A stretch of DNA of 64,000 bases, taken from NCBI GenBank assembly GCA_976226885.1, contig OZ320313.1, forward strand, positions 77,190,001-77,254,000, written 5' to 3'. Position numbers and translations under genes: made by a program. Below the pieces are notes generated by a model. It had not been told where the DNA came from. It was given only the letters and a program-made list of their open reading frames with translations, and ran no database searches. The stretch comes from Iphione sp. A-MEVVRFRX5. Lineage: Eukaryota. Shown here in pieces: positions 31,596-64,000 of this stretch (position 1 is the stretch's first letter; each line of letters begins with the position of its first letter).

Positions 31596-32670
31596 TATTT
31601 CTTGATATGTCAAAGCATTTGACATGATAAATCATTCATTAGTGATCAGTAAATTTAAAAAAGTATGGGTTTGGTATTGAAATTCAGGAGTGGTTCCAGT
31701 CATATCTGTCAGAGAGGGGTCAAAGGGTTAGATGTAATGGAATGAAATTGGATATGTTATCAGTATCTACAGGGGTACCCCAGGGGTCGGCTCTTGGCCC
31801 GTTATTGTTTATTATTGCAATTAATGACATCTTTGAAATAAGGGGCCCCTGTGACGTAGTGATCTATGCTGATGACATAACAGTTATTGCAGACGCAATG
31901 AGTGCCTGGGCTTTGAGACAAAAATTACAGTATAGTATGTCTAGGATTGAAAAGTGGTGCATGGAAAATGGGTTAATTATTAATAAAGAAAAATCTAAAA
32001 TTATGAGTTTGGGGAAGGCACAGGGATTTAATCTTGATATTAGGCTATCAGGGGTAACGCTGGGCAATGTACATGATTTTAAATTTTTAGGATATAAATT
32101 AGACTCAAGACTCAATTTTAAATCATTCATAGATGGAAAGATTAAAAAGATAAATAGTGTAAGTTATTTGTTAATTAGGTGCAGAGGGATGCTTAACATG
32201 TCATTATGAGAAAAATTCTTTATAGCATTTGTGCAGCCACATGTTGATTTTGGGCTTGGTATTTTGTTCTCAGCAAGGATGCAGAATATATCGAGGTTAC
32301 AACGAGCTTGGTGTCGTGCAGTGAGGATCTGTGTTTTAAATAGATTTTTGACAAATAGGCAGGTTGAAATTTGAGAGAAGAGAGAAGGATATATTCATTA
32401 TATGCTAGAATGGTATATGTGTCGCTGTTAACTATCACTGATCTCTTTAAATTTTCTTTTGGGGAGAGATGATTGAGGACCACAACAAGAGTAGGTACAG
32501 GAATTCAGCTACATGTTCCAAAGCCAAAACTGGAGCAGTACCGAAGAAGTTTCATCTATCGATTGATAATGTATTGGAATTGCTTACCCAGTGATGTAGT
32601 AGTTAAGGAGAGATATCTGATTAAATGTTATAATAGGGATGATATTGTTTGATTAACAGCCGCTGAATAA
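31596..32670 (+). mobile_element. 5'-truncated, decayed CR1/L2-group LINE (RT C-terminal half)
   Basis: FLDMSKAFD, GVPQGSALGPLLF, IYADD, FLGYKLDSRLNF, YWNCLPSDV; AATAAA near 32647. Confidence 0.85.
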
Positions 32671-34049
32671 AGAAAGGAAACTTGCAAATGGCTGAGTACT
32701 GTTCAGTAACAACATGTATACAATATATGACGGATATACTCAATAAAATTTTTCAAATCAAATATATGACCAAGAACGGGTTGACCATCTCTGCATCTTT
32801 ACTTAAAAACACTGATAAGTACCGTAGGTAAACAGCCTGCTCTCTTTACTGACCACACTTCAGATCAAGGCACCAGTCGGGCCCCTTGCCGGCTCAAACA
32901 TCATAATGAAATTTATAACATAAGCAAGAAGATGGTGTATAGTATATGTCTCTGTCATTATGCATTCCAGAGATATTCGCAAAAGAAGAATAAATTGAAA
33001 GTTACCATCGGTTGTAAGGTGGTACTGGGTAGGGTCGGTCAGGTCACCATAAACACAAACTTTTTTTTATTAGGCCTTATAATGAAATAGGCTAGCTACT
33101 GTATGGCAAGGCCTAGCCCAGACAGCAGTTCTAGACACTACTATATAAAGGGGAAAAGGACACAGTCCTACCAAGATAGAAAAGTAGGCCTACATATCTC
33201 ATGACTCTGGGATTTTCTTCAAAAGAAAAAAAGGAAATGGGAAAAGAGGGGAATTCAGGAGATTTAGCATTATATGTTAAAATATTGGAATGGGAACGTA
33301 AACTAGCAGATGGGGTGGGGTCAATAGAGAGAGGAGGTTGGTTACCACGAGTTTTAATGAGAAGGGGGGGATCAAAAGGGACGTCACAATTTTGACAAAT
33401 ATATTTCATCATGCAGGTATCTGTACCGAAGAAAAATAAAATTATGGGGGAGGGGTTTGCCCTTCTCCCAAAGGGAAAAGGGGAGCCCCTTTGTCCTTTG
33501 AAGCGTGCACAGCCGAGGGGTCAGTGGTAAAGTAAGGAAAATCTGTCACCTAAAATTAGGGAAGGACCCTGTTGCCTCGTATAACCAACCTTTTTTTTTT
33601 TAAGGCACCTGCCTTGTATTTATTTCTGAAGAGGTCACAGATGGTTAAATACAGCACCTTGGTTTTTAGGTTTTTTGTTAAAAAGACATAATCATGAGTG
33701 AAATAAACAGTATGTGGACATTAATTCTGTTAAGGGGCGACTCGCAACCTGAGGTATACCTTTAAAATGTTTTCCACCTGAAACATCTGGTAAGACCTGA
33801 ACAAAGGAGGCGCTGCGATCGGCACTATGGCGACAGGCTGAATTTCGGCTCCATCTTTGTAGGTGGTGGGGTTTGGAAAAGCTCTTACGATTCACTAAAC
33901 CTACCATGCCCCCAACAACATTAAACATTCAAGAACAGGAGGAAATAGTTCATCCCAGTGGCCGACTGAAGAAACTTGAGCAATACGACGTCAACGTGAG
34001 CTCAGCTTGACAATCGTACTGCGCAGCCACAGAGCCGGCAAGACTAGTT

Positions 34050-35356
34050 CCTACAAGAGATTACAAACTGGCACCCCATCTCCCTTCTCAACTTAGACTA
34101 CCAAATTTTTGCAACAATTGTTGCCAATAGACTTAGACTCTGTATTGAAGATCTAGTACTACCCCTGCAGACAGGTTACATTAAACACAGATCCATACAG
34201 GACAATCATAGACTCATTGCAGACATTCGATGGCATCTCCTTCAATCTAATATCTCAGGGGCAATCATTGCAATAGACTTCAAAAAAGCATTTGACTCAG
34301 TTAACTGGAATGCCATGATGGCCACTCTCAAAAAGTTTGGCTTCAAGGAAAACTTCTGTCACATCATTAGCCTACTATACCAAGGGGCAGAATCCTGTAT
34401 TTGTGATGGGGGATACACCACACCATTTTTTAAGATGACCAGGGCAGTCAGACAAGGCTGCCTTCTTTCACCACTTCTTTTCATTTTGGTCACAGAAATA
34501 CTTGGCAGATTAATTCAAACAAATCCTGATTTTCATGGCATACAAACCCAAGGAACCCGTTATTGTTATTTCCAATATGCAGATGACATCAGTATTTTTG
34601 CTTCCTCCCCCGCAGATGTAAATGCTATATTCTCCACACTCTCTATCTTCCAACTTGCTACAAGTATCACAGTAAACTATGTTAAGACGCAGGCCATTGC
34701 TTTTGGCAGATTTGATCCTTGTCAAGTTCTTAAAGACATTACATGGTGTACATTTGTAAAAATATTGGGCATATACTATTCCAATGGCAGTGATCCCCAT
34801 TTTGACTACTAGCATAATTTTAAGCCCAGGTTAAAACTATGTCAACAGATAGCCAACAGATGGAAAAATCAAGGGCTCTCTTGAAAAGGAAAAGTTATCA
34901 TCCATAATACGTTGATTTTGCCACTACTACAATTTGCAATATATAATTTGCCCATGCCTCCTAAAGTTATTCTCAAATATAATGCCCTTGTAACTGACTT
35001 TCTTTGGAGTGGTAAGCAAGCAAAAATCTAAAGGGATGTATTATTTCAGCCCACCTCACAGGGTGGACTAAACCTGGCTTCAATCGTTCATCGATTTTAT
35101 GCCAATCGAATAAAGTTGGTGAGCCATATGGCAGAATGCTGTAAGAATTTAACCTGGGGTGAGCTAGCTAAGAAAGCTCTGAAAATGACAAACATCAGTA
35201 AATTTTTCAAAAACAAATCTAGATGTACACTAGCTAGAGTAGCTGACCCCTTACTATAAGGAGCTATGTAAGGTGTGGACCAAATTTTATATCCAGGTCC
35301 CAAGCACAAAACTGGGCTTGTATGCAGACCCTCTATGGGTCAATGACTTCTTAGAT
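34050..35356 (+). mobile_element. L1/Tx1-like LINE ORF2 (RT), 5' segment of the element split by the 35357-43302 insertion
   Basis: NWHPISLLNLDYQI, DFKKAFDS, RQGCLLSPLLF, QYADD, KILGIYY, FLWSGK, GGLNL; ends ...PLWVNDFLD at the TSD. Confidence 0.85.
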
Positions 35357-36520
35357 TGAATTGAATTGAATAAGTTTTTATTAACCAAATTCTCAAGTGG
35401 TAAGCAGAGTTTTCCTGGTTAACAATGTAGTGCAGATGAACACAAACATAGTGACAGTAGATAACAGTGAGTAAATATAGCAAAGCAAGGACGACAAAGG
35501 TTATGAAGTATAAAGTACAGGGCTGAAGACAATTTAAGCCTGGGCTACAGAAGACAGTTCTCTTCAAGTCAGGCAGACGTAGATGCCATGCACCATACGC
35601 GCCAGTATATGAAGGAGCATACAGGAAAGCCGGAGCTTTCTGCTACACTCCCCGTAAATAAGAGAGCAATGAACAGTTACGTCTGGCAATTGCTATCTAA
35701 ACAGGAGTACGCAACGTATAAAGTTACCACGGTCGTGTTGTACTTGAATAGCTATGCTACTGCAAGTCATGTTCGCCTACGACATTAAACCAGAATGTAC
35801 ATATGTCTTGGAGTTCGAGAACAACTGCATCCGAACACGAAACCACTACTCATTGAGTTTTAACTGCTCACTATAGGTATTCACATATCTGATACATGTT
35901 ATTAAACAAGAGTTATAAGATCATGCTATGTCTTTGTCATAATCTACCTAAGGCACATAAGCAATCGCATATAGTCGATGATGCAGTTACATTGGTGGCA
36001 TAGAGGGGGGGGAAGGAGTAAAGCGAGACTGGATCTCAAACGTTGCCAGCCTGCCTTAGCTAGTTAAAGTGGATTACACACTACAGTACTGCCACGATAT
36101 CGAAGGGCTGCGTGGGGGGGGACCTATGAAGACAAGAGGCGTAATGTGGTGGGGGTTGTAGAGTGGACGGGATGGGGGAGGGAGTTGGTGGTGGTAGGTT
36201 GGACGGGAACAGTCTGGATTGTCGAAACAAGGGGGGCGGGGGAGTTTTAAGTACATTTGGTAGTTGCGGGGATTGTCAGAATATTATATTCAAGGCGGAT
36301 GAATTAGTACGGACCAGGTCTTAAATGCATATCGAGTGTGGGAATAATGAAGTGGGGGAAAAGAAGAGGGGTATAAGTGGGTCAGTGTGGGGGGGTGGGG
36401 CTTGGGACGATCATCAATGTGCATTACTATGAATTTTAGTCGTGTCTGACCCGTAGCCGCAGGCCCCCCTAATTTGAAGTCGAGGGGCCAGCCCTGTCCA
36501 GTAATTACTGCCATCAAGGC

Positions 36521-39307
36521 TTATACCCTGTAGGCAGCCGCCTGGAGTTGCCCTTGGCAAACAGCCAGCTTTCTCTTCACCTTCATAGCGTCAGGAAGTC
36601 GATTCCAGGCTCGAACGGCGCGGTATCGCAGACTCGAGGCGTATTTCATTGAGCGGGGCTTGATCATTTTTGCCTGCCATCCTGCACCCCTTCTGGTCGA
36701 GGTTCTCTTGCTGCTTGGTAGTAGACCTAGGTGCATCAGCCTGTGGACGATTTCTACCCCCTTCTTTAAGTTCAGCTCCTCAATGCGGGGGACAGCATAC
36801 AGGTGTTGGAGCCGCATTGCAGACAGGTGCGGGCCGCACTGTATTGCAGCACGCGCACATCTATTTAAGTGCGTCTGTAAACTTACCATTCCGGACGGGC
36901 TCAGTTGGAAGAGGACCACGGCATGGTACTGTACATGAGACTCGACCAACGCCCGGAAAAGTGTAAGTCTTGCTCCTAGGGGAAGGTGACGCTTGCATCT
37001 GCACAACCGTGCAGCTACCGTCCACATCTTTTGCTTCAGGTGGTTGAGATCATGCCGCATGCTTAGGGTGGGGTCCAGTTTGTAACCCAGAACGCAAGCT
37101 GAGGTTGCCAGTTGTAACTCATCGGGGCCAACATTAAGATCCAGTGGGATTCCCGCTGAACGCCCTATTGGCATGTAGCAGCACTTGTTTGCACTTAAAA
37201 GCAGGCCTTCTGTCTGACTCCATTTGTACACTGACGAGATGACGCGTTGCGAATCTGCCCGTAGCCGTAGAAGATCACGCGATGCCACTACCGCGGTTAG
37301 GTCGTCAGCGTACATGATGCCCGTGGCGTTGGACGGCAGGTGTTTGACCACGTTGTTCATCACCAACAAGAAGGCAGCCGGTCCAAAGATGGACCCCTGC
37401 GGGACTCCTTGGTTGATCCGTCGGTTAGTAGACTCAGATCCTAGGCAACGAACGTACTGGGATCTCTCGGCGAGATACCCACCCACTAAGTTGCAGATTT
37501 TGTTGCTCGCACCATGTGTCCGTAGTAGGCGGACGATGCTGTCGTGGGGCACAAGATCAAACGCCTTTTTTAGGTCGAACATTATCAGGTTGCAGTACAT
37601 GCCTAAGTTCAATTGGTCATGGGCCGTGCAGATCAGGTCGGCGATGGCGGTTTCTGTGCCTCGTCCCCTTCTGAAGCCGTGTTGGTGGATGTCAAACACA
37701 CCCTTGGCTTCGAGTCTACTCATCAACTGCGGTACAAACCAAGCTTCGCAAACCTTTCCAGGGAGTGGTAATATAGAGACCGGGCGGTAGTTTCCTGGGC
37801 TTTGCTGATCTCCTTTCTTGTAGACGGGCGTGACTCTCGCCCTCTTCCAGGGGGATGGATACTTGCCCGTCTCGTAAATTCGCCCGAAAATCCATGATAA
37901 GAAATCCGGTAGTAGTAGCAGCAGTGGCTTTAGGACGCATGTCGGTACTCCGACAACTCCTGAAGACTTTTTCAGGCGCTGCTTCTGGACGAGTTTCACT
38001 ACCTCCAGGGGTGTCGGCGGGTGAAGTTCAATCTCGTTGGCATCGTATCTGACCGCCAGTGCTGGTTGCGTCGGGTTCCTTACAGGCACCAGCCTAGTAA
38101 CCTCGTCGACAAAGTAGTCGTTAAACGCCTGTGCCACTGATTCGGTCGCCACTCCTGCTTGATTAAGTAGCTCTAGAGTCGGCAGTACTTCTCGGCGCTT
38201 TGACTGGCCCATTGCTTCCCGCAGTGTGTCCCACATCTTGCCAGCGTCCCGTCCGGCCTCCTGTAGCTTCTCCGTCCAATATCTCTTGCGTTCTCTCTGC
38301 AGCGCATAGCGGACTTTTTTATTTAGGAACTTGAAGATTCGGTGATCATCCTCATTCCGGTAGCTCTTCCAACGCTTGAAGAAGAAGTCCCTGTCCTTGA
38401 TCAAGGACAGGGTACTCACACTGATAGTCGGTCCTTCATTGACTCCCCGATAGCGCACACTCTTCTCTGGACAGGTCCTGTCGAGTTCGTTCCGTAGGCC
38501 GTCCTCAAATCTTTTCCATGCTTCTTCGTGACATCCTTCCATATTGACGAATTCTTCTCTCATACGGTCATGTAGCAGGGGGATGTCCACCTTATGCCAC
38601 TGTCGTGTTACCTTCAACGATGTCTTTAGCTTTGGCGCCCCCTTTTTCAAATCAATGCTGATTGGGAGGTGGTCACTCAGAAAGTGCTGCAGGATTCTGG
38701 CGGGTCTCCTGGCAGGGAAGCTTAGCCAGAGATGGTCCAAGCAGCTATCACTGTCCACCATGGTGCCATCCATAATCAGTTGAGAGAGACCTCTACCCGC
38801 CAGCGCGTTGATGATTCCGGAGCCAGCACCACCAGCTTTGGAGTAGTTGTAATTGAAGTCGCCAGTGATACAGCAGTCATGTCGTCGTCTATCGAGAAAA
38901 TCGTCACAGGCTGCAGATATGGCTTTGATGGAGTGAGCCATCTTATCATGCGGGGGTCTGTAGACCAAGATGATGTCCAACGGTCGTCGTTTGCCCCCCT
39001 TGATAGTTATCGCTAGCAGTTCACAGCATGACCCCTCTTGTTCAGGCAGTGCTGTACGCAAGATGTCAATGCCATCCTTCACAAAGATGACAACACCCCC
39101 TCCACGTTGGCGTTGTAATTCCGTTCTGTCCCGTCGTATCATTTCATATCCTGGGAGAAGAATTTCATCATCCTTCACAGCCGGCGTCAGCCAGGTTTCC
39201 GTAATGCATAGCACATCCACATTTTCGTTCTTCACGAGGTCGCATATGTCTGGCATTTTCCTCCTGATGCTCCGGATATTGTAGACCACCATGCGTAGTT
39301 TGCCCAT
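36521..39307 (-). CDS. LINE ORF2: APE endonuclease plus reverse transcriptase (CR1/L2/Crack/Daphne type)
   Basis: VVYNIRS, LCITETWL, RRDR..GGGV, VYRPP, ITGDFN, CLDH, SDH; YRPVSILP, QHGFR, DLKKAFD, GVPQGSIFGP, YADD. No stops; first ATG 39307 (the ORF track starts at GTG 39337). Confidence 0.95.
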   Translation of the reverse strand: MGKLRMVVYNIRSIRRKMPDICDLVKNENVDVLCITETWLTPAVKDDEILLPGYEMIRRDRTELQRQRGGGVVIFVKDGIDILRTALPEQEGSCCELLAITIKGGKRRPLDIILVYRPPHDKMAHSIKAISAACDDFLDRRRHDCCITGDFNYNYSKAGGAGSGIINALAGRGLSQLIMDGTMVDSDSCLDHLWLSFPARRPARILQHFLSDHLPISIDLKKGAPKLKTSLKVTRQWHKVDIPLLHDRMREEFVNMEGCHEEAWKRFEDGLRNELDRTCPEKSVRYRGVNEGPTISVSTLSLIKDRDFFFKRWKSYRNEDDHRIFKFLNKKVRYALQRERKRYWTEKLQEAGRDAGKMWDTLREAMGQSKRREVLPTLELLNQAGVATESVAQAFNDYFVDEVTRLVPVRNPTQPALAVRYDANEIELHPPTPLEVVKLVQKQRLKKSSGVVGVPTCVLKPLLLLLPDFLSWIFGRIYETGKYPSPWKRARVTPVYKKGDQQSPGNYRPVSILPLPGKVCEAWFVPQLMSRLEAKGVFDIHQHGFRRGRGTETAIADLICTAHDQLNLGMYCNLIMFDLKKAFDLVPHDSIVRLLRTHGASNKICNLVGGYLAERSQYVRCLGSESTNRRINQGVPQGSIFGPAAFLLVMNNVVKHLPSNATGIMYADDLTAVVASRDLLRLRADSQRVISSVYKWSQTEGLLLSANKCCYMPIGRSAGIPLDLNVGPDELQLATSACVLGYKLDPTLSMRHDLNHLKQKMWTVAARLCRCKRHLPLGARLTLFRALVESHVQYHAVVLFQLSPSGMVSLQTHLNRCARAAIQCGPHLSAMRLQHLYAVPRIEELNLKKGVEIVHRLMHLGLLPSSKRTSTRRGAGWQAKMIKPRSMKYASSLRYRAVRAWNRLPDAMKVKRKLAVCQGQLQAAAYRV

Positions 39308-40848
39308 CACTAGGCCGCAGTAAGGGGGGAGTGCCACCTCTGCCAGCTATTTAGGTGGCCCGCAGCCACGGGTCACACAAGCGAGGGTGGTATAATATGG
39401 AGTAGGGTCGATATCCAATATACCTGGGGTAATAGGGGGCGGGGCGGTTAGTTACTGGTATAAATTAGAAAGAAATTGATGGAGAGGGGAAATAAGTAAA
39501 TAAGCAGGGGGAAAAGATGGAGTAAGGGGTCGAGCTAGGGAGGGACGCAGAGACAATGTGACAATGAGAGTCAGGCATGGGGCAGGGTCATTGGCGTAGA
39601 TGTTAGCGAGGCAGGTCAGGATGGGAAGAGAGAGCACAGAAAACGTTTAGGACTGAGTCATCCTCAAGAGTTGTCTTACTAGAAAGAATTCACAAGATAA
39701 CACATAGCGGCAACAGTCATAATGTAACTACAGCAGCGCATCCAGTGTGCGTGATAAAATTTCACGGAGCCGGTTGAAATGGCAGGAAAGGATTCATTAG
39801 CTAACACACAGCATCATCACTCATGGTCGGAGCACAGTCGCACATTTGGTACCCGTACTAAAGATCCACAGAGTCGTTATCAGAGTTGGTAACAGGATAA
39901 TTAAAAATCATTTTGTAAACAAAAACAAGATTGTACTACTGAAGTTGCTTTTCATAGATTGTGTAACCGCATGGCCAAGATGAATAGCTTGACGTCAAGG
40001 CCTGGCTCGAAAATGATTATCAGTAGCGCATACCTCGTCACTGCCAGTCGCCAGTATATGCAATAAATGCAGTGATGTACCTGTCCATGGCGAGTAAACA
40101 GATGGCAAGGAATAATGGGGTAGTATCAGTATATTTTGGCCGTCACAGCCGTTCGCTAGTATAGGTAGTATAAGCAGTAATATAGCTGCCCATGGTGGAG
40201 AGGAAAAGAGGGGTTGACGAGAAGTTATGTGAGGAAGTTAACAGAAGTTATGCAAATATAACCCGACGCATGATCCTATAGAAAGCCAGCTCCGTAGTAC
40301 AGTGCTCTGCGGTCACGCCGTATTATGCTAGACACCAGATGGACACTTGCGAGTAAAACGGGACAGACTAGATTAACTGTTCATGCGGTATACCAGAACT
40401 CCCTACAAAACAAAATACCTGAGATGTATGATTTAACTATGTTTGTGCAATATAGCAAGGTCTCTCTTCAGTTCTAATACCTGAACTATCACAATATAGT
40501 GTCAACAAGAGGCGTAAGTCATGACAACATTCACAAAAACACTCTCTGCAGCATGTCTTGTCCATAATCTGTTGTTAAAACATAGTCTAAGTAAAGAATA
40601 ATAAGAACAAGCACATTGAGAGACGCTGGGATAAGACAAACGTTCGCAAATCGCTACACGGTTAGACAGTTATAAACACCCTGATAGAAAGAGTCTATGG
40701 TAAATTTGTGATTAACTTTAGAGTCACTGTAGCGAGATATAGTCAATGTTCGTATGTCGTTAGATAATTAGACGGTTGTAAACTCTCTGGTAAAGGCGTT
40801 GACAGTAAATATCGTATTTAACCTTAGAGTCACTGCAGCACGACATAG

Positions 40849-41490
40849 TCAGTGTGGATTAACGGTTGGTCCAAACAGGGCACTGAAGGCCCATATGAAC
40901 TTCGACAGTTTTTTAGCCCAGTAATTGGTTACATACTCACGTGGCGTTATGCCATCGTCTTCCAAAGCACCGCATTCCCGGAACAATAGCCCCTCCATCC
41001 TCTCGGCAGGGGGCATGTCCAGGGTTGGGCAGATAAGGCCAAGCCCAAGTCCAATCTCATGCGCGAGTCTGTTATGCACAGCAATCAGCGCGTCAAGTCG
41101 TACTTGCTCCGCAGGGTCCTCGATGTCAGGTTCCAACTTCATGAGATCGACACTTGGTACCGCTCCTAGGATCAGTCGGGGGCCGGTTGCCTCTGGCCCG
41201 GAAACGCGATCTGTCAGCTCTCCGATTATTCCCGTAAGGACCTCTCGATACCTGCCTGGGTCACGCATGACGGCGGACCATTGCCCATCCACACGCGCCA
41301 GGCAGTCAAATGTGCCAGTTATCATCAGCACAACATGGAAGGTCGAGGTGTCCACACCAATACCCCTTCGCAACATGTACCAGTAGCTTCGCCGTTTCGT
41401 GGAGACTATATGGATCTCCACAGGCGGCATCGCCAAGCCGCGGAGTTTGGTGCAAGCGGGCGAGGTCCTGCTGTCACACAGTATCATCAC
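40849..41490 (-). CDS. SGNH/GDSL hydrolase-like ORF of the LINE, catalytic motifs altered
   Basis: Block I ILCDSR (GDS-like), block III ITGTFD (GxND-like), block V DDGITP (DGxHP-like, His absent); 213 codons open. Confidence 0.75.
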   Translation of the reverse strand: MMILCDSRTSPACTKLRGLAMPPVEIHIVSTKRRSYWYMLRRGIGVDTSTFHVVLMITGTFDCLARVDGQWSAVMRDPGRYREVLTGIIGELTDRVSGPEATGPRLILGAVPSVDLMKLEPDIEDPAEQVRLDALIAVHNRLAHEIGLGLGLICPTLDMPPAERMEGLLFRECGALEDDGITPREYVTNYWAKKLSKFIWAFSALFGPTVNPH

Positions 41491-41727
41491 CCGAAGTCGG
41501 TCCCTACCGGGGACTCCCTGATGGTTCTTTATAATAACATCTGTCAGATGAAGGAGGGAAACAGTACCAGGACAGCATCAGAGATAATATACAACATCAA
41601 GTACCACACAACAGATCAGACTACAGATCACAGTTAAACATGATTTAAAAGCTTAGTGACTATTTTTGAGTAGAGCCAGGCCTAGTAGCCGGCAGTTATC
41701 ATCGTTGACTCAGTTACACTGGCGAAA

Positions 41728-43233
41728 TTACCTCTTTGTAGAGTTACGAATTATGTCACGGACTCGCATGAGCGCACGTCCTAAAATATTTTGACCAGAT
41801 CGGTTCGCTGATTCATCGTCCATTTTACCAAATGGGACGCCACTACCAAGTTCCTCGTCGGCATCGGCATACACCAATTCCCTGTCGCCAGACGACAACA
41901 GAGAAAAACTCATCATACGATTTAGCCTATATTTGCTTAGGAGTAACTTATCCAAAAGTACCTCTCGATTTTCCTGCCATGATTCGCTAGGATCCTTTTC
42001 TAGGCTCACTTTCCTGGAATCAAATCCGCAGCTTGCACGCTCGATTTTTCTCAGAGCCTCGATATCGCCTGAATCGCGCGCTTTTAGACTACGGTACGCG
42101 CTTTCGAGATTGTCGTAAACTTTATGCTCATAAGAGATGATCGCAGGTTCCACCGGTGACAGCGATGGGGAATCATTTGAGAATATCACCTGTTCGTCAC
42201 TGACGTGGGCAAACAGGTTGGAAGGCGATATTTCTTTGGGCAGCTTGTGTGTTTCATTCGGCCCAAAACGCTCTCCTTCGACCACGATGTCTACCCCCTT
42301 CGCAGTCGCGCGGATACCCTGTTTTCTGATCACTGATGCAAGCCGGGACTGCTTCTTGTTTACTTCCGCCGCCCTTTGCGGGATGTCCTCCTTAATAAAC
42401 ACATTTTTTAGGGTCCCTTTTTTCATAAGAGAGGCTTTATTTTTCAGCACCTTATTTCTCGCGTCCACGGAGTAGAGATCCACAAGGATACGGCTGTTGT
42501 TGTTGTCCCCGCCTAACCATCGGGCGCTCATAATCTCATCCCGATGTAAACCGGCAGCTGTCTGAAGGACAGATTGTGCAGTACGTAGTGCACTTTTTTC
42601 CTTTCGTGCTCCTTCGATAATTAGCTTATGTGAACGCTCTCTTATCTCAGCTCTGGAGATGTCAAGATCTAACTTGTCACAGCGGTTCGTAACGCTGGAA
42701 AGCACTGCTTCGACATTCTCCAACCTGCCTAGAATATTTAACTGTGCCGGTGGCTCCTTGTCAACCTCCGGCCTTCCAGCCTTGACTGTGTCTGCCAGTT
42801 CCTTGACCTTAGCATCAAACTGGCTCTTCAGATCGTTGAGACTATTGTATACCTCGGCCCAACGTTTCTTGCAGGTGTTGCAGCAGTCACAGTTATCCTT
42901 GCTTTCATCGTTCATATCTTTGACGCCATCTGGCACTCCGCCTGGTCCCGTAGGGCCCTCACGATCGCCGGTGTTGACAGTGTCAACCCGGCTAGGGTTT
43001 GGCATAGGCATTGGTGCCGGTGTCGATACCAGTGTCGGTGTCGGTGTCAACCCTCCTCGATCGCCGGCTCTCCCGGTATCGCCATTCTTGCTCCCATTAT
43101 CGCTCGTCAACGGACCCGTTTGCTCAATCTGGTCGTTACTCACTGAGTCCTTATCTTTCTTTCGTTGCTTCGACATGGACCTCAGCGTCGGGGTATTCCC
43201 CGGCGGCTCTTTGAACCCAGATCGTCTGCTCAT
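41728..43233 (-). CDS. LINE ORF1: disordered N-terminus, Cys cluster, coiled coil, RRM-like domain, C-terminal NADAR/YbiA-like domain
   Basis: KLIIEG...ARWLG...RILVDL...VFIKEDIP (ORF1 RRM-like). C-terminal ~160 aa: YDNLESAYRSLKA, WQENREVLLDKLLLSKY, LLSSGDRELVYADADEELGSG, GQNILGRALMRVRD (NADAR pattern). Confidence 0.88.
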   Translation of the reverse strand: MSRRSGFKEPPGNTPTLRSMSKQRKKDKDSVSNDQIEQTGPLTSDNGSKNGDTGRAGDRGGLTPTPTLVSTPAPMPMPNPSRVDTVNTGDREGPTGPGGVPDGVKDMNDESKDNCDCCNTCKKRWAEVYNSLNDLKSQFDAKVKELADTVKAGRPEVDKEPPAQLNILGRLENVEAVLSSVTNRCDKLDLDISRAEIRERSHKLIIEGARKEKSALRTAQSVLQTAAGLHRDEIMSARWLGGDNNNSRILVDLYSVDARNKVLKNKASLMKKGTLKNVFIKEDIPQRAAEVNKKQSRLASVIRKQGIRATAKGVDIVVEGERFGPNETHKLPKEISPSNLFAHVSDEQVIFSNDSPSLSPVEPAIISYEHKVYDNLESAYRSLKARDSGDIEALRKIERASCGFDSRKVSLEKDPSESWQENREVLLDKLLLSKYRLNRMMSFSLLSSGDRELVYADADEELGSGVPFGKMDDESANRSGQNILGRALMRVRDIIRNSTKR

Positions 43234-43302
43234 CGTCTCTGTGTCGCTCCGTATTTCTGGACCCTCTTACATGCACGTCCTACTCGGTCGGCGCCATTGA
43301 TC

Positions 43303-44336
43303 TAGATCAAGCACGATTATGTAAAATAAGACACAAGCTAGAACCAGCTGGTTGCCTGTATATAGGACATTTGTTAACCAATAATATTACATTATGGTCC
43401 ATTGAAGAATTGAAACTCAAGTACTCTGTAACCATTACCACCTCAGAACATGCTATATTGTCCAGAGGTATGCCCAATTATTACAAGGTTCAATTTCAAG
43501 AAGAAGCCATCAATACAGATGACCTAAGTAGGCTAATCATCGAAAACCTAGAACAAGCAAAAATTTTATCTCTTCTATCAGCCAAACAAATATATGATCT
43601 CACATTGGAATTAGAGGCAGAAGATATCCCATGTAAAAGAAGATTAACAACCCAGATTTCAGGGTTAATAACAGAAGAGTTCACATGGCAAGGTATTTTC
43701 CTGAATGCTTTTCAATGCTGTTTGTCCACAAAATTTCAAAGCTTCATGTATAAGGTTATTTTCATGCTTATACCCTGTAAGTCATATCTACAAAAAATCT
43801 GTGTAGTAGAATCCAGTGAATGTCCATTCTGTTCCAACAAAGATGATATCATCCACTTTTTCTTTACTTGTCCAACAACTGAACAATTTTGGTGTACATT
43901 ATTTCAATGGTACAAATTTACATTTGGTATTAAAATCCACACCCTTGTAACAAAGGAACTCTTATTGGGTGTTCAAGATCAATTTCCAAATAGAAGTATT
44001 CTCAATTATGTACTTGTTGTTGCCAAATTCTTTATATACAAGAGGAAACTATTTCATAATGGCAATTTAAACTTTAAAGTTTTTCTGTCTGAATTGTTGC
44101 AGTTAATAAGCCTAAGATGTATGGCTCATATATATAGAGGTTCACACAATAGTCATAAAAAATGGAGGGATTTAAAAGACATGCTACAATTAATGCAGAC
44201 ATCATAAATCCCTGTTATGTTTTCCTGTTAAGGTTACTCGTTTTCTCTTTATTGTTATGTAAAACAAAAGAGTCGACGCATCATCCTGTATCCTTCCTCA
44301 GAAATAAATGGTGAGACGCCAATTTAAAAAAAAAAA
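43303..44336 (+). mobile_element. L1/Tx1-like LINE 3' segment (zf-RVT region and poly-A tail), continuation of 34050-35356
   Basis: Resumes DQARLCKIRHKLEPAG...; FQSFMYK...CPFC..DDIIHFFFTC..FW; AATAAA near 44303 and A-tail at about 44325-44336. Confidence 0.85.
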
Positions 44337-62985: not shown

Positions 62986-64000
62986 GTAAGCAATTAAGTC
63001 TGTCTCGCCTAGAACAAGTTCGTAATTAGCCAGGTTCGAAGGTCAGGACGAACACCGCCGCTCGAGTCACTGATTAAATTGAATCGAATTGATTAATAGG
63101 TTGTTGGGTATCCATGTCTTACAATCATGTTAGCTTTCAGCGGGTCCTCAAGACGACGAGCAAAATATAACCAGAAATATAGATGTAGAAATAAGACGTA
63201 TTAATCACAATATCAAAAGATCGTTCCTATATACTTTTCTAACCACGTTATCGATAGGTTATAATGAACAGGCAATACTGAAGACGTAATGCCACTATGC
63301 TAGGGATCTTCAAACCACTTGATATATATATATATATGCTTGCATAACAATAAGCGAAGAAAAATTGGGGTGATTATAGGGACACAGAGAAAAACGGATG
63401 GCAGGGGTGGTGTAAGATTGATCTAGTGACTCCCTATAGGGAATAGACGAGAGAAAATAATTCGAGGCAAAGGTTATCCAAACTAACAGTATACCAACAA
63501 ACTACAGTGATGGTGATACTCACCCCCGGAAAAGATTTTCACATGACATTAGATCATGTTCAACCACACTAAATAATGGTATGACATTTTAATGTTTCAG
63601 AAGCCGTATGAGGAAATTAACGGACATAATTTACTTTTTAGCCTCAATTTCATCATGATCAATTTGAGGAAACCAATTCCACAGGCCAGTAGCTGTGAAT
63701 TGGAAGAATTTTGAAAACAAATCTGAATTTGGTCTATCGGGTTTTAGGGAAAAAAAGGTTTTAAAAATAGTGGAAAGACTGTGACAACTCTTACTTATCT
63801 TAGACTCTATACAGAGGCAAAGCCTCCACAAAATAACGAATAAAAATCAGCACATATAATATGACTGTCTTTAGGAGAGGCTACGATAGCGATTGTTCCT
63901 CCAGAAAGCTTGACGTTGTAGAGCTTGCAATCGCATTCCAGGGTGTCCGAAATGTCATGCTGCTGCCTTCTCCATTGCTGTTAAAAACTATTAACAAAGC

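What the first reader, a model, noticed from the sequence alone, without database searches (positions are those of the whole stretch)
35357..43302. Intact 7.95-kb CR1/L2-group LINE with three ORFs: ORF1-NADAR, stand-alone SGNH-like ORF, EN-RT
Seen: both ends, a 5-bp TSD (TAGAT), a 5' ATGGCGCC motif, an (ATTCA)n tail and three stop-free ORFs (501, 213 and about 928 aa), so this is probably a young copy. Established: CR1/L2 LINEs usually have two ORFs, and some carry an SGNH esterase within ORF1. Inference: this family has a tricistronic layout with two accessory enzyme-like modules, a NADAR domain and an unfused SGNH domain. I do not know of a description of this combination, but could not search for one.
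Basis: partly seen in the sequence, partly recalled or inferred. Interest (0 to 1): 0.92.

Follow-up and report, generated by a model that had tools for sequence, protein, structure and literature searches.

The report
Young three-ORF LINE carrying NADAR
This is a recently inserted, apparently intact 7.95-kb LINE retrotransposon whose first protein ends in a NADAR domain (an enzyme type that removes ADP-ribose from DNA/RNA bases) and which carries an extra conserved gene before its endonuclease-reverse transcriptase gene; that extra gene could not be confirmed as an SGNH esterase.

Summary
On the minus strand of 35357-43302 lie a 501-aa ORF, a 212/213-aa ORF and a 928/938-aa ORF. The block ends in (ATTCA)3 and is flanked by TAGAT on both sides. 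CpG observed/expected is 0.64-1.2 across the whole block, spacer and 3'UTR included, against 0.06-0.26 in the flanks. The flanks are also the two halves of an older plus-strand L1-like LINE.

ORF1's C-terminus is a YbiA-type NADAR domain (Pfam 1.5e-15, PHROG 3.8e-17, TIGR02464 1.2e-12). ORF3 is an APE endonuclease plus RT without RNase H. ORF2 is a real conserved coding sequence: a metagenome homologue shares 49% identity, with pN 0.37 against pS 0.81.

The SGNH label for ORF2 is not established. Pfam and PDB gave nothing, a 13-sequence SGNH HMM and hhalign gave no signal, and AlphaFold2 failed twice. The only support is a weak BLASTP match to E. coli TesA (E 0.009). The block III Asn and block V His positions read Phe and Thr.

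CR1/L2 membership is consistent but unproven. No second copy could be found, so the three-ORF layout as a family trait is untested. NADAR in LINE ORF1 has already been noted for oyster Tx1 elements. I rate this a new variant of a known kind, of moderate interest.

The parts
35357..43302 (-). Whole element, 7946 bp: 5'UTR, ORF1, ORF2, spacer, ORF3, 3'UTR, tail.
   Evidence: The CpG o/e step at both ends. The flanks are two halves of an older plus-strand LINE. No internal tail was found.
35352..35356 (.). Left copy of the putative 5-bp target-site duplication, TAGAT.
   Evidence: Sequence read. Weak on its own.
43303..43307 (.). Right copy of the putative TSD, TAGAT. It lies inside the 14-bp palindrome at 43297-43310.
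   Evidence: Sequence read.
43234..43302 (-). Short 5'UTR of 69 nt. It begins GATCAATGGCGCC and holds a 5-codon upstream ORF.
41731..43233 (-). ORF1, 501 aa. It has a low-complexity basic/Pro-Thr-rich N-terminus, a helical coiled-coil-like middle, and a C-terminal NADAR domain.
41746..42213 (-). NADAR (YbiA-type) domain, ORF1 residues 341-496.
   Evidence: Pfam PF08719 at 1.5e-15 and 58.3 bits, above the 35.1-bit cut-off. TIGR02464 at 1.2e-12. PHROG 1017 at 3.8e-17. The top PDB hit is NADAR 8bau. In the alignment to E. coli YbiA the E-x7-K and GxNxLG..LM..R motifs are kept and the 'LVE' Glu is not.
41488..41730 (-). ORF1-ORF2 interval of 243 nt including the ORF1 stop. ORF2 is in the same frame as ORF1, with three further stops and 5 ATGs in between.
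40852..41487 (-). ORF2, 212 aa, a conserved protein of unassigned fold. It shows an SGNH-like motif order only: MILCDS, ITGTFDC, DDGITP.
   Evidence: Its codon-usage score resembles ORF1 and ORF3.
40864..41181 (-). Part of ORF2 (residues 103-208) that is conserved with metagenome protein P0001 / locus L001.
   Evidence: phmmer 1.3e-17. tblastn 5e-30 at 49% identity. pN 0.37 against pS 0.81.
39308..40848 (-). Non-coding spacer of 1541 nt between the ORF2 stop and the ORF3 ATG. GC is 0.43 and CpG o/e 0.78. It holds 26 ATGs, and its 3' part is pyrimidine/C-rich.
36524..39307 (-). ORF3, 928 aa: endonuclease plus reverse transcriptase, no RNase H and no zinc knuckle.
38669..39283 (-). APE-type endonuclease domain.
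   Evidence: PF03372 at 5.2e-11 and PF14529 at 4.3e-07. xth-like TIGR00633.
37172..37819 (-). Reverse transcriptase domain.
   Evidence: PF00078 at 9.5e-28. PDB: R2Bm 7e-15 and human L1 ORF2p 1.4e-06.
35372..36520 (-). 3'UTR of about 1.15 kb. A C-rich tract covers roughly 36000-36450. An 11-bp hairpin and an AATAAA lie just before the tail.
   Evidence: The hairpin is not significant against shuffles.
35357..35371 (-). 3' microsatellite tail, (ATTCA)3.
   Evidence: It is the only such run inside the element.

Best explanation
The block is one young, structurally intact APE-type non-LTR retrotransposon. It resembles CR1/L2 elements in having no RNase H, no L1-type zinc knuckle and a short microsatellite tail. 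It inserted by target-primed reverse transcription, antisense, into an older L1-like LINE.

Shown:
- It carries three intact cistrons.
- ORF1p ends in a YbiA-type NADAR domain that keeps the Glu/Lys pair conserved across the NADAR superfamily.
- ORF2 encodes a protein under purifying selection whose fold is unassigned.
- ORF3 encodes EN-RT.

Inferred:
- ORF1p is the RNA-binding or multimerising particle protein. Its NADAR domain would remove ADP-ribose, or a related N-glycosidic adduct, from bases of the element's RNA, its cDNA or the target DNA. That would protect retrotransposition from nucleic-acid ADP-ribosylation.
- ORF2p, if it is SGNH-derived at all, is a non-catalytic derivative acting as a binding module, not an esterase.
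- ORF3 lies 1.5 kb and 26 AUGs downstream of ORF2. It must therefore be reached by internal initiation, a subgenomic or spliced RNA, or not at all in this copy.
For: One insertion:
- CpG o/e is uniformly 0.64-1.2 from about 35300 to about 43300, against 0.06-0.26 outside.
- The flanks are RVT_1 and zf-RVT parts of one older plus-strand LINE.
- There is no internal tail or microsatellite.
- TAGAT lies on both sides.

Intactness: three stop-free ORFs.

NADAR:
- Three independent profile libraries match it.
- The E-x7-K motif is aligned to YbiA.
- These are the two residues reported as conserved across the superfamily (PMC11543638).
- NADARs hydrolyse guanine-ADP-ribose on DNA, and phages use orphan NADARs as counter-defence.

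ORF2 is coding:
- A homologue matches at 49% identity.
- pN 0.37 is far below pS 0.81.
- The codon score of frame 1 is +0.07, like ORF1 and ORF3 cross-validated, and the other frames are negative.

EN-RT class:
- Pfam domains.
- No RNase H.
- Bombyx R2 scores better than human L1 ORF2p in the PDB.
- ORF3 groups within an 85-sequence RNase-H-less set that holds all four PHD-fused RTs, separated from the RNase-H-bearing set.

Precedent: NADAR in the ORF1 of oyster Tx1 LINEs.
Against: - Only one copy is available, so the three-ORF layout and the spacer may be peculiar to this copy.
- A 1.5-kb spacer with 26 ATGs (21.7 expected) argues against ordinary reinitiation.
- The spacer and UTRs have lower GC than the ORFs.
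- The only ORF2 homologue (L001) looks more like a terminal exon than a LINE fragment. It has an acceptor-like signal upstream, and 1.1 kb of CpG-poor sequence with no RT downstream.
- NADAR lacks the charged residue (Glu/Asp/His) of the last strand at the aligned position, where it has Tyr. Its activity is therefore uncertain.
- The middle of ORF1 matches no known ORF1p domain.
- The best RT relatives share only about 26% identity, and ORF3 sits on a long branch.
- The TSD is only 5 bp.
Confidence: 0.6

Rival explanations
1. One-off chimera. The family is normally bicistronic (ORF1-NADAR plus EN-RT). This copy picked up ORF2 and the spacer from a host transcript or another element by template switching or recombination. 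It is then a dead-on-arrival or dead-end copy that has not yet decayed.
For: - The L001 homologue of ORF2 looks like a cellular terminal exon. It has a pyrimidine tract plus CAG upstream and a stop, then AT-rich, CpG-poor sequence without RT downstream.
- The spacer is non-coding, has lower GC, and holds 26 ATGs that would block access to ORF3.
- No database protein of similar length resembles ORF2.
Against: - CpG o/e of ORF2 (0.84) and the spacer (0.78) is as high as in the rest of the element and unlike host DNA at 0.33-0.38.
- ORF2 codon usage matches ORF1 and ORF3.
- ORF2 is intact and begins with its own ATG.
- A captured spliced mRNA piece would not bring 1.5 kb of extra non-coding sequence that is CpG-normal.
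Confidence: 0.25
2. Two separate elements lie side by side: an ORF1+ORF2 unit, and an ORF1-less EN-RT LINE with a long 5'UTR.
For: - ORF1-less CR1-group elements exist (PMC13343379).
- The spacer could be read as a 1.5-kb 5'UTR.
- The window is a dense field of TE fragments.
Against: - Copies made by target-primed reverse transcription are complete at the 3' end, so an upstream unit would need its own tail and TSD inside the spacer. None is present.
- Neither unit continues beyond 35357 or 43302, where CpG-poor halves of one older LINE begin.
- NADAR-bearing ORF1 proteins are documented as LINE ORF1s, and ORF3 is the only RT in the right orientation.
Confidence: 0.07
3. One reading: ORF2 is an SGNH esterase module like the esterase of CR1/L2/RTEX ORF1 proteins, here encoded separately.
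For: - The order and spacing of motifs resemble SGNH blocks I, III and V.
- BLASTP to E. coli TesA gives E 0.009 and aligns DDGITP with the catalytic DDGIHP.
- The Smith-Waterman score is reached by 16 of 2000 shuffles.
- The helices in the low-confidence AF2 models fall where SGNH helices are expected.
Against: - No Pfam hit at E<=10, no PDB hit, and none in NCBIfam or PHROGs.
- In the 13-sequence SGNH HMM search, 334 of 3000 shuffles score as high.
- hhalign gives probability 0.3% and E 0.19.
- The N-terminal half, which would hold blocks I-III, shows no similarity.
- The Asn and His positions read Phe and Thr, and Thr is also present in the homologue.
- LINE esterases keep all catalytic residues (PMC3905857).
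Confidence: 0.3

Closest known systems
CR1/L2-group LINEs with an esterase-type ORF1 (for example ZfL2-1; Kapitonov & Jurka 2003; Schneider et al. 2013, PMC3905857)
   Same: - APE endonuclease plus RT in one ORF, without RNase H.
- A short microsatellite 3' tail, with a hairpin candidate just before it.
- An accessory enzyme-type module encoded upstream of EN-RT.
   Different: - Those elements have two ORFs, and the esterase is fused to a coiled coil inside ORF1p with Ser, Gly, Asn, Asp and His all kept.
- Here ORF1p carries NADAR instead.
- The candidate SGNH-like protein is a separate cistron without Asn or His and without profile support.
- A 1.5-kb spacer precedes EN-RT.
- RT identity to anything in the databases is about 26%.
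Tx1 LINEs of Crassostrea gigas with NADAR in ORF1 (Repbase families, noted in PMC12477816)
   Same: A YbiA-family NADAR domain lies within a LINE ORF1 protein.
   Different: Tx1 belongs to the L1 group. ORF3 here matches Bombyx R2 (7e-15) better than human L1 ORF2p (1.4e-06) and has no zf-RVT or zinc knuckle. The NADAR is therefore in a different LINE lineage. I could not compare the sequences directly.
Ectocarpus Gypsy LTR retrotransposons with an N-terminal NADAR in Pol (PMC12477816)
   Same: A retroelement has captured a YbiA-type NADAR domain.
   Different: A different retroelement class, and a different position (Pol N-terminus rather than ORF1p C-terminus).
Bdelloid rotifer Vesta LTR and Athena elements with stand-alone GDSL/SGNH ORF3, some without catalytic residues (PMC5408684)
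   Same: An extra, separately encoded (pseudo)esterase-like ORF in a retroelement.
   Different: Different element classes. Those ORFs were recognisable by HHpred, whereas this ORF2 is not recognisable with the profiles available here.
Phage orphan NADARs and DarT1-NADAR or YarT-YbiA toxin-antitoxin pairs (PMC11543638, PMC11125620, PMC11257639)
   Same: A mobile genetic element carries a NADAR hydrolase. The Glu/Lys catalytic pair is kept.
   Different: Those are free-standing prokaryotic or phage proteins with a defined ADP-ribosyltransferase opponent. Here the domain is fused to a eukaryotic LINE ORF1p, no opponent is known, and the third charged catalytic residue is not at the aligned position.

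Membership tests
Non-LTR retrotransposon (LINE), APE type | One ORF with an N-terminal AP-endonuclease-like domain followed by a reverse transcriptase domain. | tested here: met
   PF03372 at 5.2e-11, PF14529 at 4.3e-07 and PF00078 at 9.5e-28, in that order in ORF3.
Non-LTR retrotransposon (LINE), APE type | Insertion signature: a defined 3' tail, target-site duplication, and interruption of pre-existing sequence. | tested here: met
   An (ATTCA)3 tail. A 5-bp TAGAT on both sides, which is weak. The block interrupts an older LINE, and there is a CpG step at both ends.
CR1/L2 group of LINEs | RT-domain phylogeny places the element among labelled CR1/L2 references (RTclass1, Repbase or Dfam). 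| not testable with these tools
   No labelled references were available. In an unlabelled tree ORF3 lies within the RNase-H-less set that contains all PHD-fused RTs. It sits on a long branch with a best identity of 26%.
CR1/L2 group of LINEs | No RNase H domain and no L1-type C-terminal zinc knuckle; not a member of the L1/Tx1 group. | tested here: met
   Only EN and RT are found. R2Bm at 7e-15 scores better than human L1 ORF2p at 1.4e-06.
CR1/L2 group of LINEs | A 3' end made of a short microsatellite instead of poly(A), preceded by a stem-loop. | tested here: inconclusive
   The microsatellite tail is present. An 11-bp hairpin lies directly upstream, but its folding energy is no better than shuffles, z = -0.58. 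No other copies were available to test conservation.
CR1/L2 group of LINEs | ORF1 of a described type (esterase, PHD, Tnp22-like CC-RRM-CTD, RRM+CCHC). | tested here: not met
   ORF1 has only NADAR plus weak coiled-coil-type hits. It matches no esterase, PHD, Tnp22 or CCHC model.
NADAR superfamily (PF08719; YbiA family) | A profile match above the curated threshold over the whole domain. | tested here: met
   PF08719 at 58.3 bits against a cut-off of 35.1, covering profile positions 2-163 of 163. PHROG 1017 at 3.8e-17. TIGR02464 at 1.2e-12, which is below its equivalog cut-off.
NADAR superfamily (PF08719; YbiA family) | The catalytic Glu and Lys conserved across the superfamily (E88 and K95 of E. 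coli C7 NADAR). | tested here: met
   LESAYRSLKA aligns with SEHYFQAQKF of E. coli YbiA, with the same E-x7-K spacing. The residue roles come from PMC11543638. This rests on a two-sequence alignment.
NADAR superfamily (PF08719; YbiA family) | [quoted passage not shown] | tested here: not met
   YbiA's LVEH aligns with LV-Y. Acidic residues lie two positions to either side. The criterion comes from PMC11125620. The alignment is uncertain.
SGNH/GDSL hydrolase superfamily | A significant sequence-profile or fold match. | tested here: not met
   - No Pfam hit at E<=10.
- No PDB hit.
- The 13-sequence HMM gave no signal.
- hhalign probability was 0.3%.
- AF2 pLDDT was 36 and 40, so no fold search was possible.
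- The only support is pairwise TesA, E 0.009.
SGNH/GDSL hydrolase superfamily | The block I nucleophile Ser in a GDS-type motif near the N-terminus. | tested here: inconclusive
   MILCDS at residues 1-6 has the Ser, but Cys stands where Gly is expected. This half gives no significant alignment.
SGNH/GDSL hydrolase superfamily | The block III Asn (GxND) and the block V Asp-x-x-His. | tested here: not met
   ITGTFDC has Phe at the Asn position. DDGITP has Thr at the His position when aligned to TesA's DDGIHP. Thr is also present in the homologue, DGRT.

The most novel reading that the evidence does not exclude
This is a deep-branching CR1/L2-like LINE lineage that is truly tricistronic. Its ORF1p carries an active NADAR that strips ADP-ribose from bases of the element's RNA or cDNA, or of the target DNA. 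That would be a counter-defence against host or microbial nucleic-acid ADP-ribosyltransferases, analogous to phage orphan NADARs. A separately encoded non-catalytic SGNH-derived protein serves as an RNA- or membrane-binding cofactor. EN-RT is expressed from the 1.5-kb spacer by an IRES or an internal or spliced transcript. This would be the first sign that nucleic-acid ADP-ribosylation restricts retrotransposons in animals.
Probability: 0.12. Interest if true: 0.85.

Novelty: new variant of a known kind. Interest (0 to 1): 0.55.

Why it matters
LINE ORF1 proteins are the least understood part of these elements, and accessory enzyme domains in them are rare. Since 2023 NADAR has been known to reverse ADP-ribosylation of DNA and RNA bases, and phages use it to escape DarT-type defence.

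A NADAR domain fused to an intact, young LINE ORF1p outside the Tx1 lineage suggests repeated capture by retroelements. It also gives a concrete, testable idea: base ADP-ribosylation may affect retrotransposition in animals.

An extra conserved cistron and a 1.5-kb spacer before EN-RT would, if they are a family trait, raise the question of how a LINE translates a third ORF. If this copy is a one-off chimera, the finding reduces to one more NADAR-ORF1 LINE.

Tried and rejected
Searches for homologues and other copies:
- Similar-length homologue searches for ORF2 and ORF1 found nothing.
- The ORF3 search found only relatives at about 26% identity, so no family members were available for comparing architecture.
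- The upstream regions of three of those relatives carry no NADAR or ORF2-like sequence.
- The all-representatives phmmer search for ORF2 found one true homologue, P0001, 111 aa. It is the only member of its cluster.
- Metagenome scans (ORF2 alignment, ORF3) and a viral scan (NADAR part) found nothing.

Fold and family of ORF2:
- AlphaFold2 failed on ORF2 alone and with the two-row alignment, pLDDT 36 and 40. I ran no fold search, because it would be meaningless at that confidence.
- PDB phmmer and hmmsearch for ORF2 gave nothing relevant.
- I built my own SGNH profile. E. coli TesA relatives from genome contigs were too similar to be useful, at 88% identity or more. I therefore fetched 12 diverse arylesterase/GDSL genes from plasmids. 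Neither the resulting HMM nor hhalign supported an SGNH assignment.

Other checks:
- The middle of ORF1 against PDB and Pfam gave only coiled-coil-type noise and no L1-type ORF1p match.
- Rfam and tRNA scans of the element and of the whole window found nothing.
- The spacer's small ORFs have no Pfam match.
- Folding of the 3' end and of the region before ORF3 was not better than shuffles.
- A tail-like 17-mer near 63075 is not a related copy.

Rejected: Tx1/L1 membership, and the two-juxtaposed-elements model, because there is no internal tail.

The host organism could not be identified.

Full report
OBSERVATION

The element lies on the minus strand. Listing and translating ORFs gives three stop-free frames in the same orientation:
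- ORF1: 41731-43233, 501 aa, ATG start.
- ORF2: 40852-41487, 212 aa from ATG, 213 from the GTG one codon upstream.
- ORF3: 36524-39307, 928 aa from the first ATG, 938 from the GTG at 39337.

The 3' end is (TGAAT)x3 on the plus strand at 35357-35371, which is (ATTCA)3 in the sense orientation. TRF reports 3.4 copies at 100%. An AATAAA lies just upstream. TAGAT occurs at 35352-35356 and at 43303-43307. The sense strand starts GATCAATGGCGCC.

The 5-bp duplication is weak by itself. The 5' junction also lies within a 14-bp palindrome, TTGATCTAGATCAA, at 43297-43310.

INDEPENDENT SUPPORT FOR THE ENDS AND FOR ONE INSERTION

The host DNA is CpG-depleted, with o/e 0.33-0.38 in the 5-kb flanks. In 600-nt windows, CpG o/e is 0.17-0.26 at 34100-35000. 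It jumps to 0.64-0.73 at 35300 and stays at 0.66-1.23 through ORF3, the spacer, ORF2 and ORF1. It then falls to 0.06-0.20 from 43400. The spacer (0.78) and the 3'UTR (0.66) share the 'young' state of the ORFs.

The flanks themselves are two consecutive parts of one older plus-strand LINE. RVT_1 lies at 34315-34809 and a zf-RVT-bearing ORF at 43371-44204. The joined flanks read as RT, thumb, then zinc-binding region. The 7.95-kb block is thus a recent insertion into an old L1-like element.

Copies made by target-primed reverse transcription are complete at the 3' end. A model with two juxtaposed elements therefore needs a tail or TSD inside the block. None is present.

ORF1

The C-terminal 156 residues (341-496; window 41746-42213) are a NADAR domain:
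- Pfam PF08719: 1.5e-15, 58.3 bits against a cut-off of 35.1, full profile coverage.
- PHROG 1017: 3.8e-17.
- NCBIfam TIGR02464, the YbiA-type riboflavin-intermediate N-glycosidase: 1.2e-12, below its equivalog cut-off.
- The only PDB sequence hit of the isolated domain is a NADAR protein, 8bau, at E 0.3.

Alignment to E. coli YbiA (fetched) gives these correspondences:
- LESAYRSLKA falls opposite SEHYFQAQKF.
- GQNILGRALMRVR falls opposite GKNRLGYLLMELR.
- The D..G.G motif is kept.

The Glu and Lys with seven-residue spacing correspond to the two residues reported as conserved across the superfamily and needed for guanine-ADP-ribose hydrolysis (PMC11543638).

The charged residue of the last strand distinguishes the subfamilies: Glu in YbiA, Asp in BC4488, His in phage NADARs (PMC11125620). 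It is not at the aligned position here, where LVE reads LV-Y. Activity is therefore plausible but not assured.

The rest of ORF1 is a low-complexity basic and Pro/Thr-rich N-terminus followed by a helical region. That region gives only weak hits to coiled-coil families. No esterase, PHD, Tnp22 or zinc-knuckle domain was detected, and there was no PDB match.

ORF2

It is a real gene:
- An exhaustive phmmer search of 1.84 billion representatives found one true homologue, P0001, 111 aa, at 1.3e-17.
- By tblastn it matches ORF2 residues 103-208 at 49% identity, E 5e-30.
- Across 110 aligned codons, synonymous sites are saturated (pS 0.81) while pN is 0.37. That is purifying selection on the protein.
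- A codon-usage model trained on ORF1+ORF3 scores ORF2 frame 1 at +0.07. ORF1 and ORF3 score similarly when cross-validated, and all other frames are negative.

What ORF2 is remains open. By eye the sequence has the order of SGNH blocks: MILCDS at the N-terminus, ITGTFDC, DDGITP near the C-terminus, and helices between them. A single a-priori comparison with the archetypal SGNH enzyme E. coli TesA gave a colinear BLASTP alignment with E 0.009. That alignment puts DDGITP on the catalytic DDGIHP. A Smith-Waterman shuffle test gave 16 of 2000, all from the C-terminal half.

Everything else was negative:
- Pfam gave nothing at E<=10.
- NCBIfam and PHROGs gave nothing.
- PDB phmmer and profile searches gave nothing.
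- For an HMM built from 13 diverse TesA/arylesterase/GDSL proteins, 334 of 3000 shuffles scored as high as ORF2.
- hhalign gave probability 0.3%.
- Two AlphaFold2 runs were unusable, pLDDT 36 and 40.

At the positions of the oxyanion Asn and the catalytic His the protein has Phe and Thr, and the homologue also has Thr. LINE esterases keep the complete catalytic set (PMC3905857).

My reading is as follows. ORF2p is a conserved protein of unassigned fold. I put descent from an SGNH fold at about 0.3. An active canonical esterase is unlikely. If it is SGNH-derived, it would resemble non-catalytic relatives such as the Oskar OSK domain cited in PMC3905857.

ORF2 is in the same frame as ORF1, 80 codons downstream, with three additional stops between them.

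The homologue locus L001 is a 1590-bp ENA metagenome contig. Homology begins abruptly after a pyrimidine tract plus CAG and ends at a stop. The stop is followed by 1.1 kb of AT-rich, CpG-poor sequence (o/e 0.35) with no RT. That looks more like a terminal exon of a cellular gene than a 5'-truncated LINE. It leaves open capture of ORF2 from a host gene, or domestication in the other direction.

SPACER AND UNTRANSLATED REGIONS

Between the ORF2 stop and the ORF3 ATG lie 1541 nt with these properties:
- No ORF is longer than 61 aa and there are no Pfam matches.
- GC is 0.43.
- There are 26 ATGs against 21.7 expected.
- A diverged 106-nt tandem duplication overlaps the ORF2 stop.
- There is a pyrimidine/C-rich 3' part. 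It ends in an ACTAAC, Y-tract, CAG|G signal about 115 nt before the ORF3 ATG.

The 3'UTR is 1.15 kb and also has a long C-rich tract. Spacer and 3'UTR have the same skewed base composition on the sense strand (C 0.25-0.28, G 0.17-0.18). Ordinary termination-reinitiation cannot plausibly reach ORF3. An IRES, an internal promoter, splicing, or non-expression in this copy are the options. All of these are inference.

ORF3 AND CLASS

- Domains: an APE-type endonuclease (PF03372, PF14529) then RT (PF00078), with no RNase H and no zinc knuckle.
- PDB: Bombyx R2 scores best at 7e-15, and human L1 ORF2p only 1.4e-06. This argues against the L1/Tx1 group.
- Database relatives: the best are only about 26% identical.
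- Tree: in a FastTree of 107 sequences, ORF3 lies on a long branch inside the RNase-H-less set. That set contains all four PHD-fused RT proteins and is separated from the twelve RNase-H-bearing ones.
- Literature: PHD and esterase ORF1 types are features of the CR1 and L2 lineages (PMC4120745; PMC13343379).

Together with the microsatellite tail, this is consistent with the CR1/L2 group. It is not a membership test, because no labelled references were available.

COMPARISON WITH WHAT IS KNOWN

- CR1/L2 elements are described with one or two ORFs, and their esterase is part of ORF1p.
- Stand-alone GDSL ORFs, some without catalytic residues, are known from bdelloid LTR and Athena elements.
- NADAR in a LINE ORF1 has been mentioned once in the literature available here, for Tx1 families of Crassostrea gigas. 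The same paper reports NADAR in Ectocarpus Gypsy Pol (PMC12477816).
- I found no description of NADAR in a CR1/L2-like element, of NADAR together with a second accessory cistron, or of a 1.5-kb spacer before EN-RT. Repbase and Dfam could not be searched.

MECHANISM

Shown: an intact EN-RT LINE with a NADAR-bearing ORF1p and a conserved extra protein.

Inferred:
- Retrotransposition is by target-primed reverse transcription.
- ORF1p acts as the particle protein.
- NADAR removes ADP-ribose or a similar adduct from nucleic-acid bases on the LINE RNA, cDNA or target. This follows the analogy with DarT1-NADAR and YarT-YbiA pairs and with phage orphan NADARs. RNA processing is an alternative role (C. 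elegans SNA-3).
- NADARs are reported as absent from chordates, which hints at a non-chordate host. The host was not identified.

VERDICT

- LINE: yes.
- NADAR: yes.
- Intact and young: yes.
- Single insertion: well supported.
- SGNH: not shown.
- CR1/L2: consistent only.
- Tricistronic family: untested.

This is a new variant of a known kind, with interest about 0.55.

Noticed in passing
window 33900-35356 and 43303-44207 (+): An older, CpG-depleted plus-strand L1-like LINE (RVT_1 at 34315-34809; zf-RVT ORF at 43371-44204) is split by the young element. It could serve as an internal 'empty site' if a second copy of that older family were available.
   Followed up: partly
window 31655-32622 (+): A third, different RT fragment (RVT_1 C-terminal half). 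It is 29-39% identical to ORF3 residues 595-916. The region is a dense field of LINE fragments.
   Followed up: partly
window 43297-43310: A perfect 14-bp palindrome, TTGATCTAGATCAA, straddles the 5' junction and includes the right TSD copy. It may reflect microhomology at the 5' join, or chance.
   Followed up: no
window about 39345-39370 and about 36443-36468 (-): A 26-nt segment just upstream of the ORF3 start is 81% reverse-complementary to a segment 53-78 nt after the ORF3 stop (E 0.06). This could be a long-range RNA pairing that brackets ORF3, or chance.
   Followed up: no
window 39424-39545 and 36000-36450 (-): Pyrimidine/C-rich tracts flank ORF3 on the sense strand. The upstream tract ends in ACTAAC, a Y-tract, then CAG|G, which resembles a branch point plus 3' splice site about 115 nt before the ORF3 ATG. 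Only mediocre donor-like sites were found (40418, 40080).
   Followed up: partly
window 40639-40749 / 40745-40855 (-): A diverged tandem duplication of about 106 nt (72% over 112 nt; a 38-nt core at 84%) overlaps the stop codon of ORF2.
   Followed up: no
window 42659-43300 (+): A 213-aa ATG-started ORF lies antisense to the low-complexity 5' part of ORF1 and ends at the element's 5' edge. It is probably a by-product of the GC-rich repetitive coding sequence opposite.
   Followed up: no
L001:84-470 (ENA ERZ4874705, 1590-bp contig): The only homologue of ORF2 is a 370-nt GC-rich, CpG-normal island. It is preceded by a pyrimidine tract plus CAG and followed by 1.1 kb of AT-rich, CpG-poor sequence without RT. 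This is exon-like rather than LINE-like, and suggests the ORF2 family also exists as a cellular gene or a domesticated one.
   Followed up: partly
window 63075-63089 (-): A tail-like 17-mer matches the element's 3' end at 15 of 17 positions. The adjacent sequence shows no similarity to the element's 3'UTR, and 33 of 300 shuffles score as high.
   Followed up: yes
   Followed up: no
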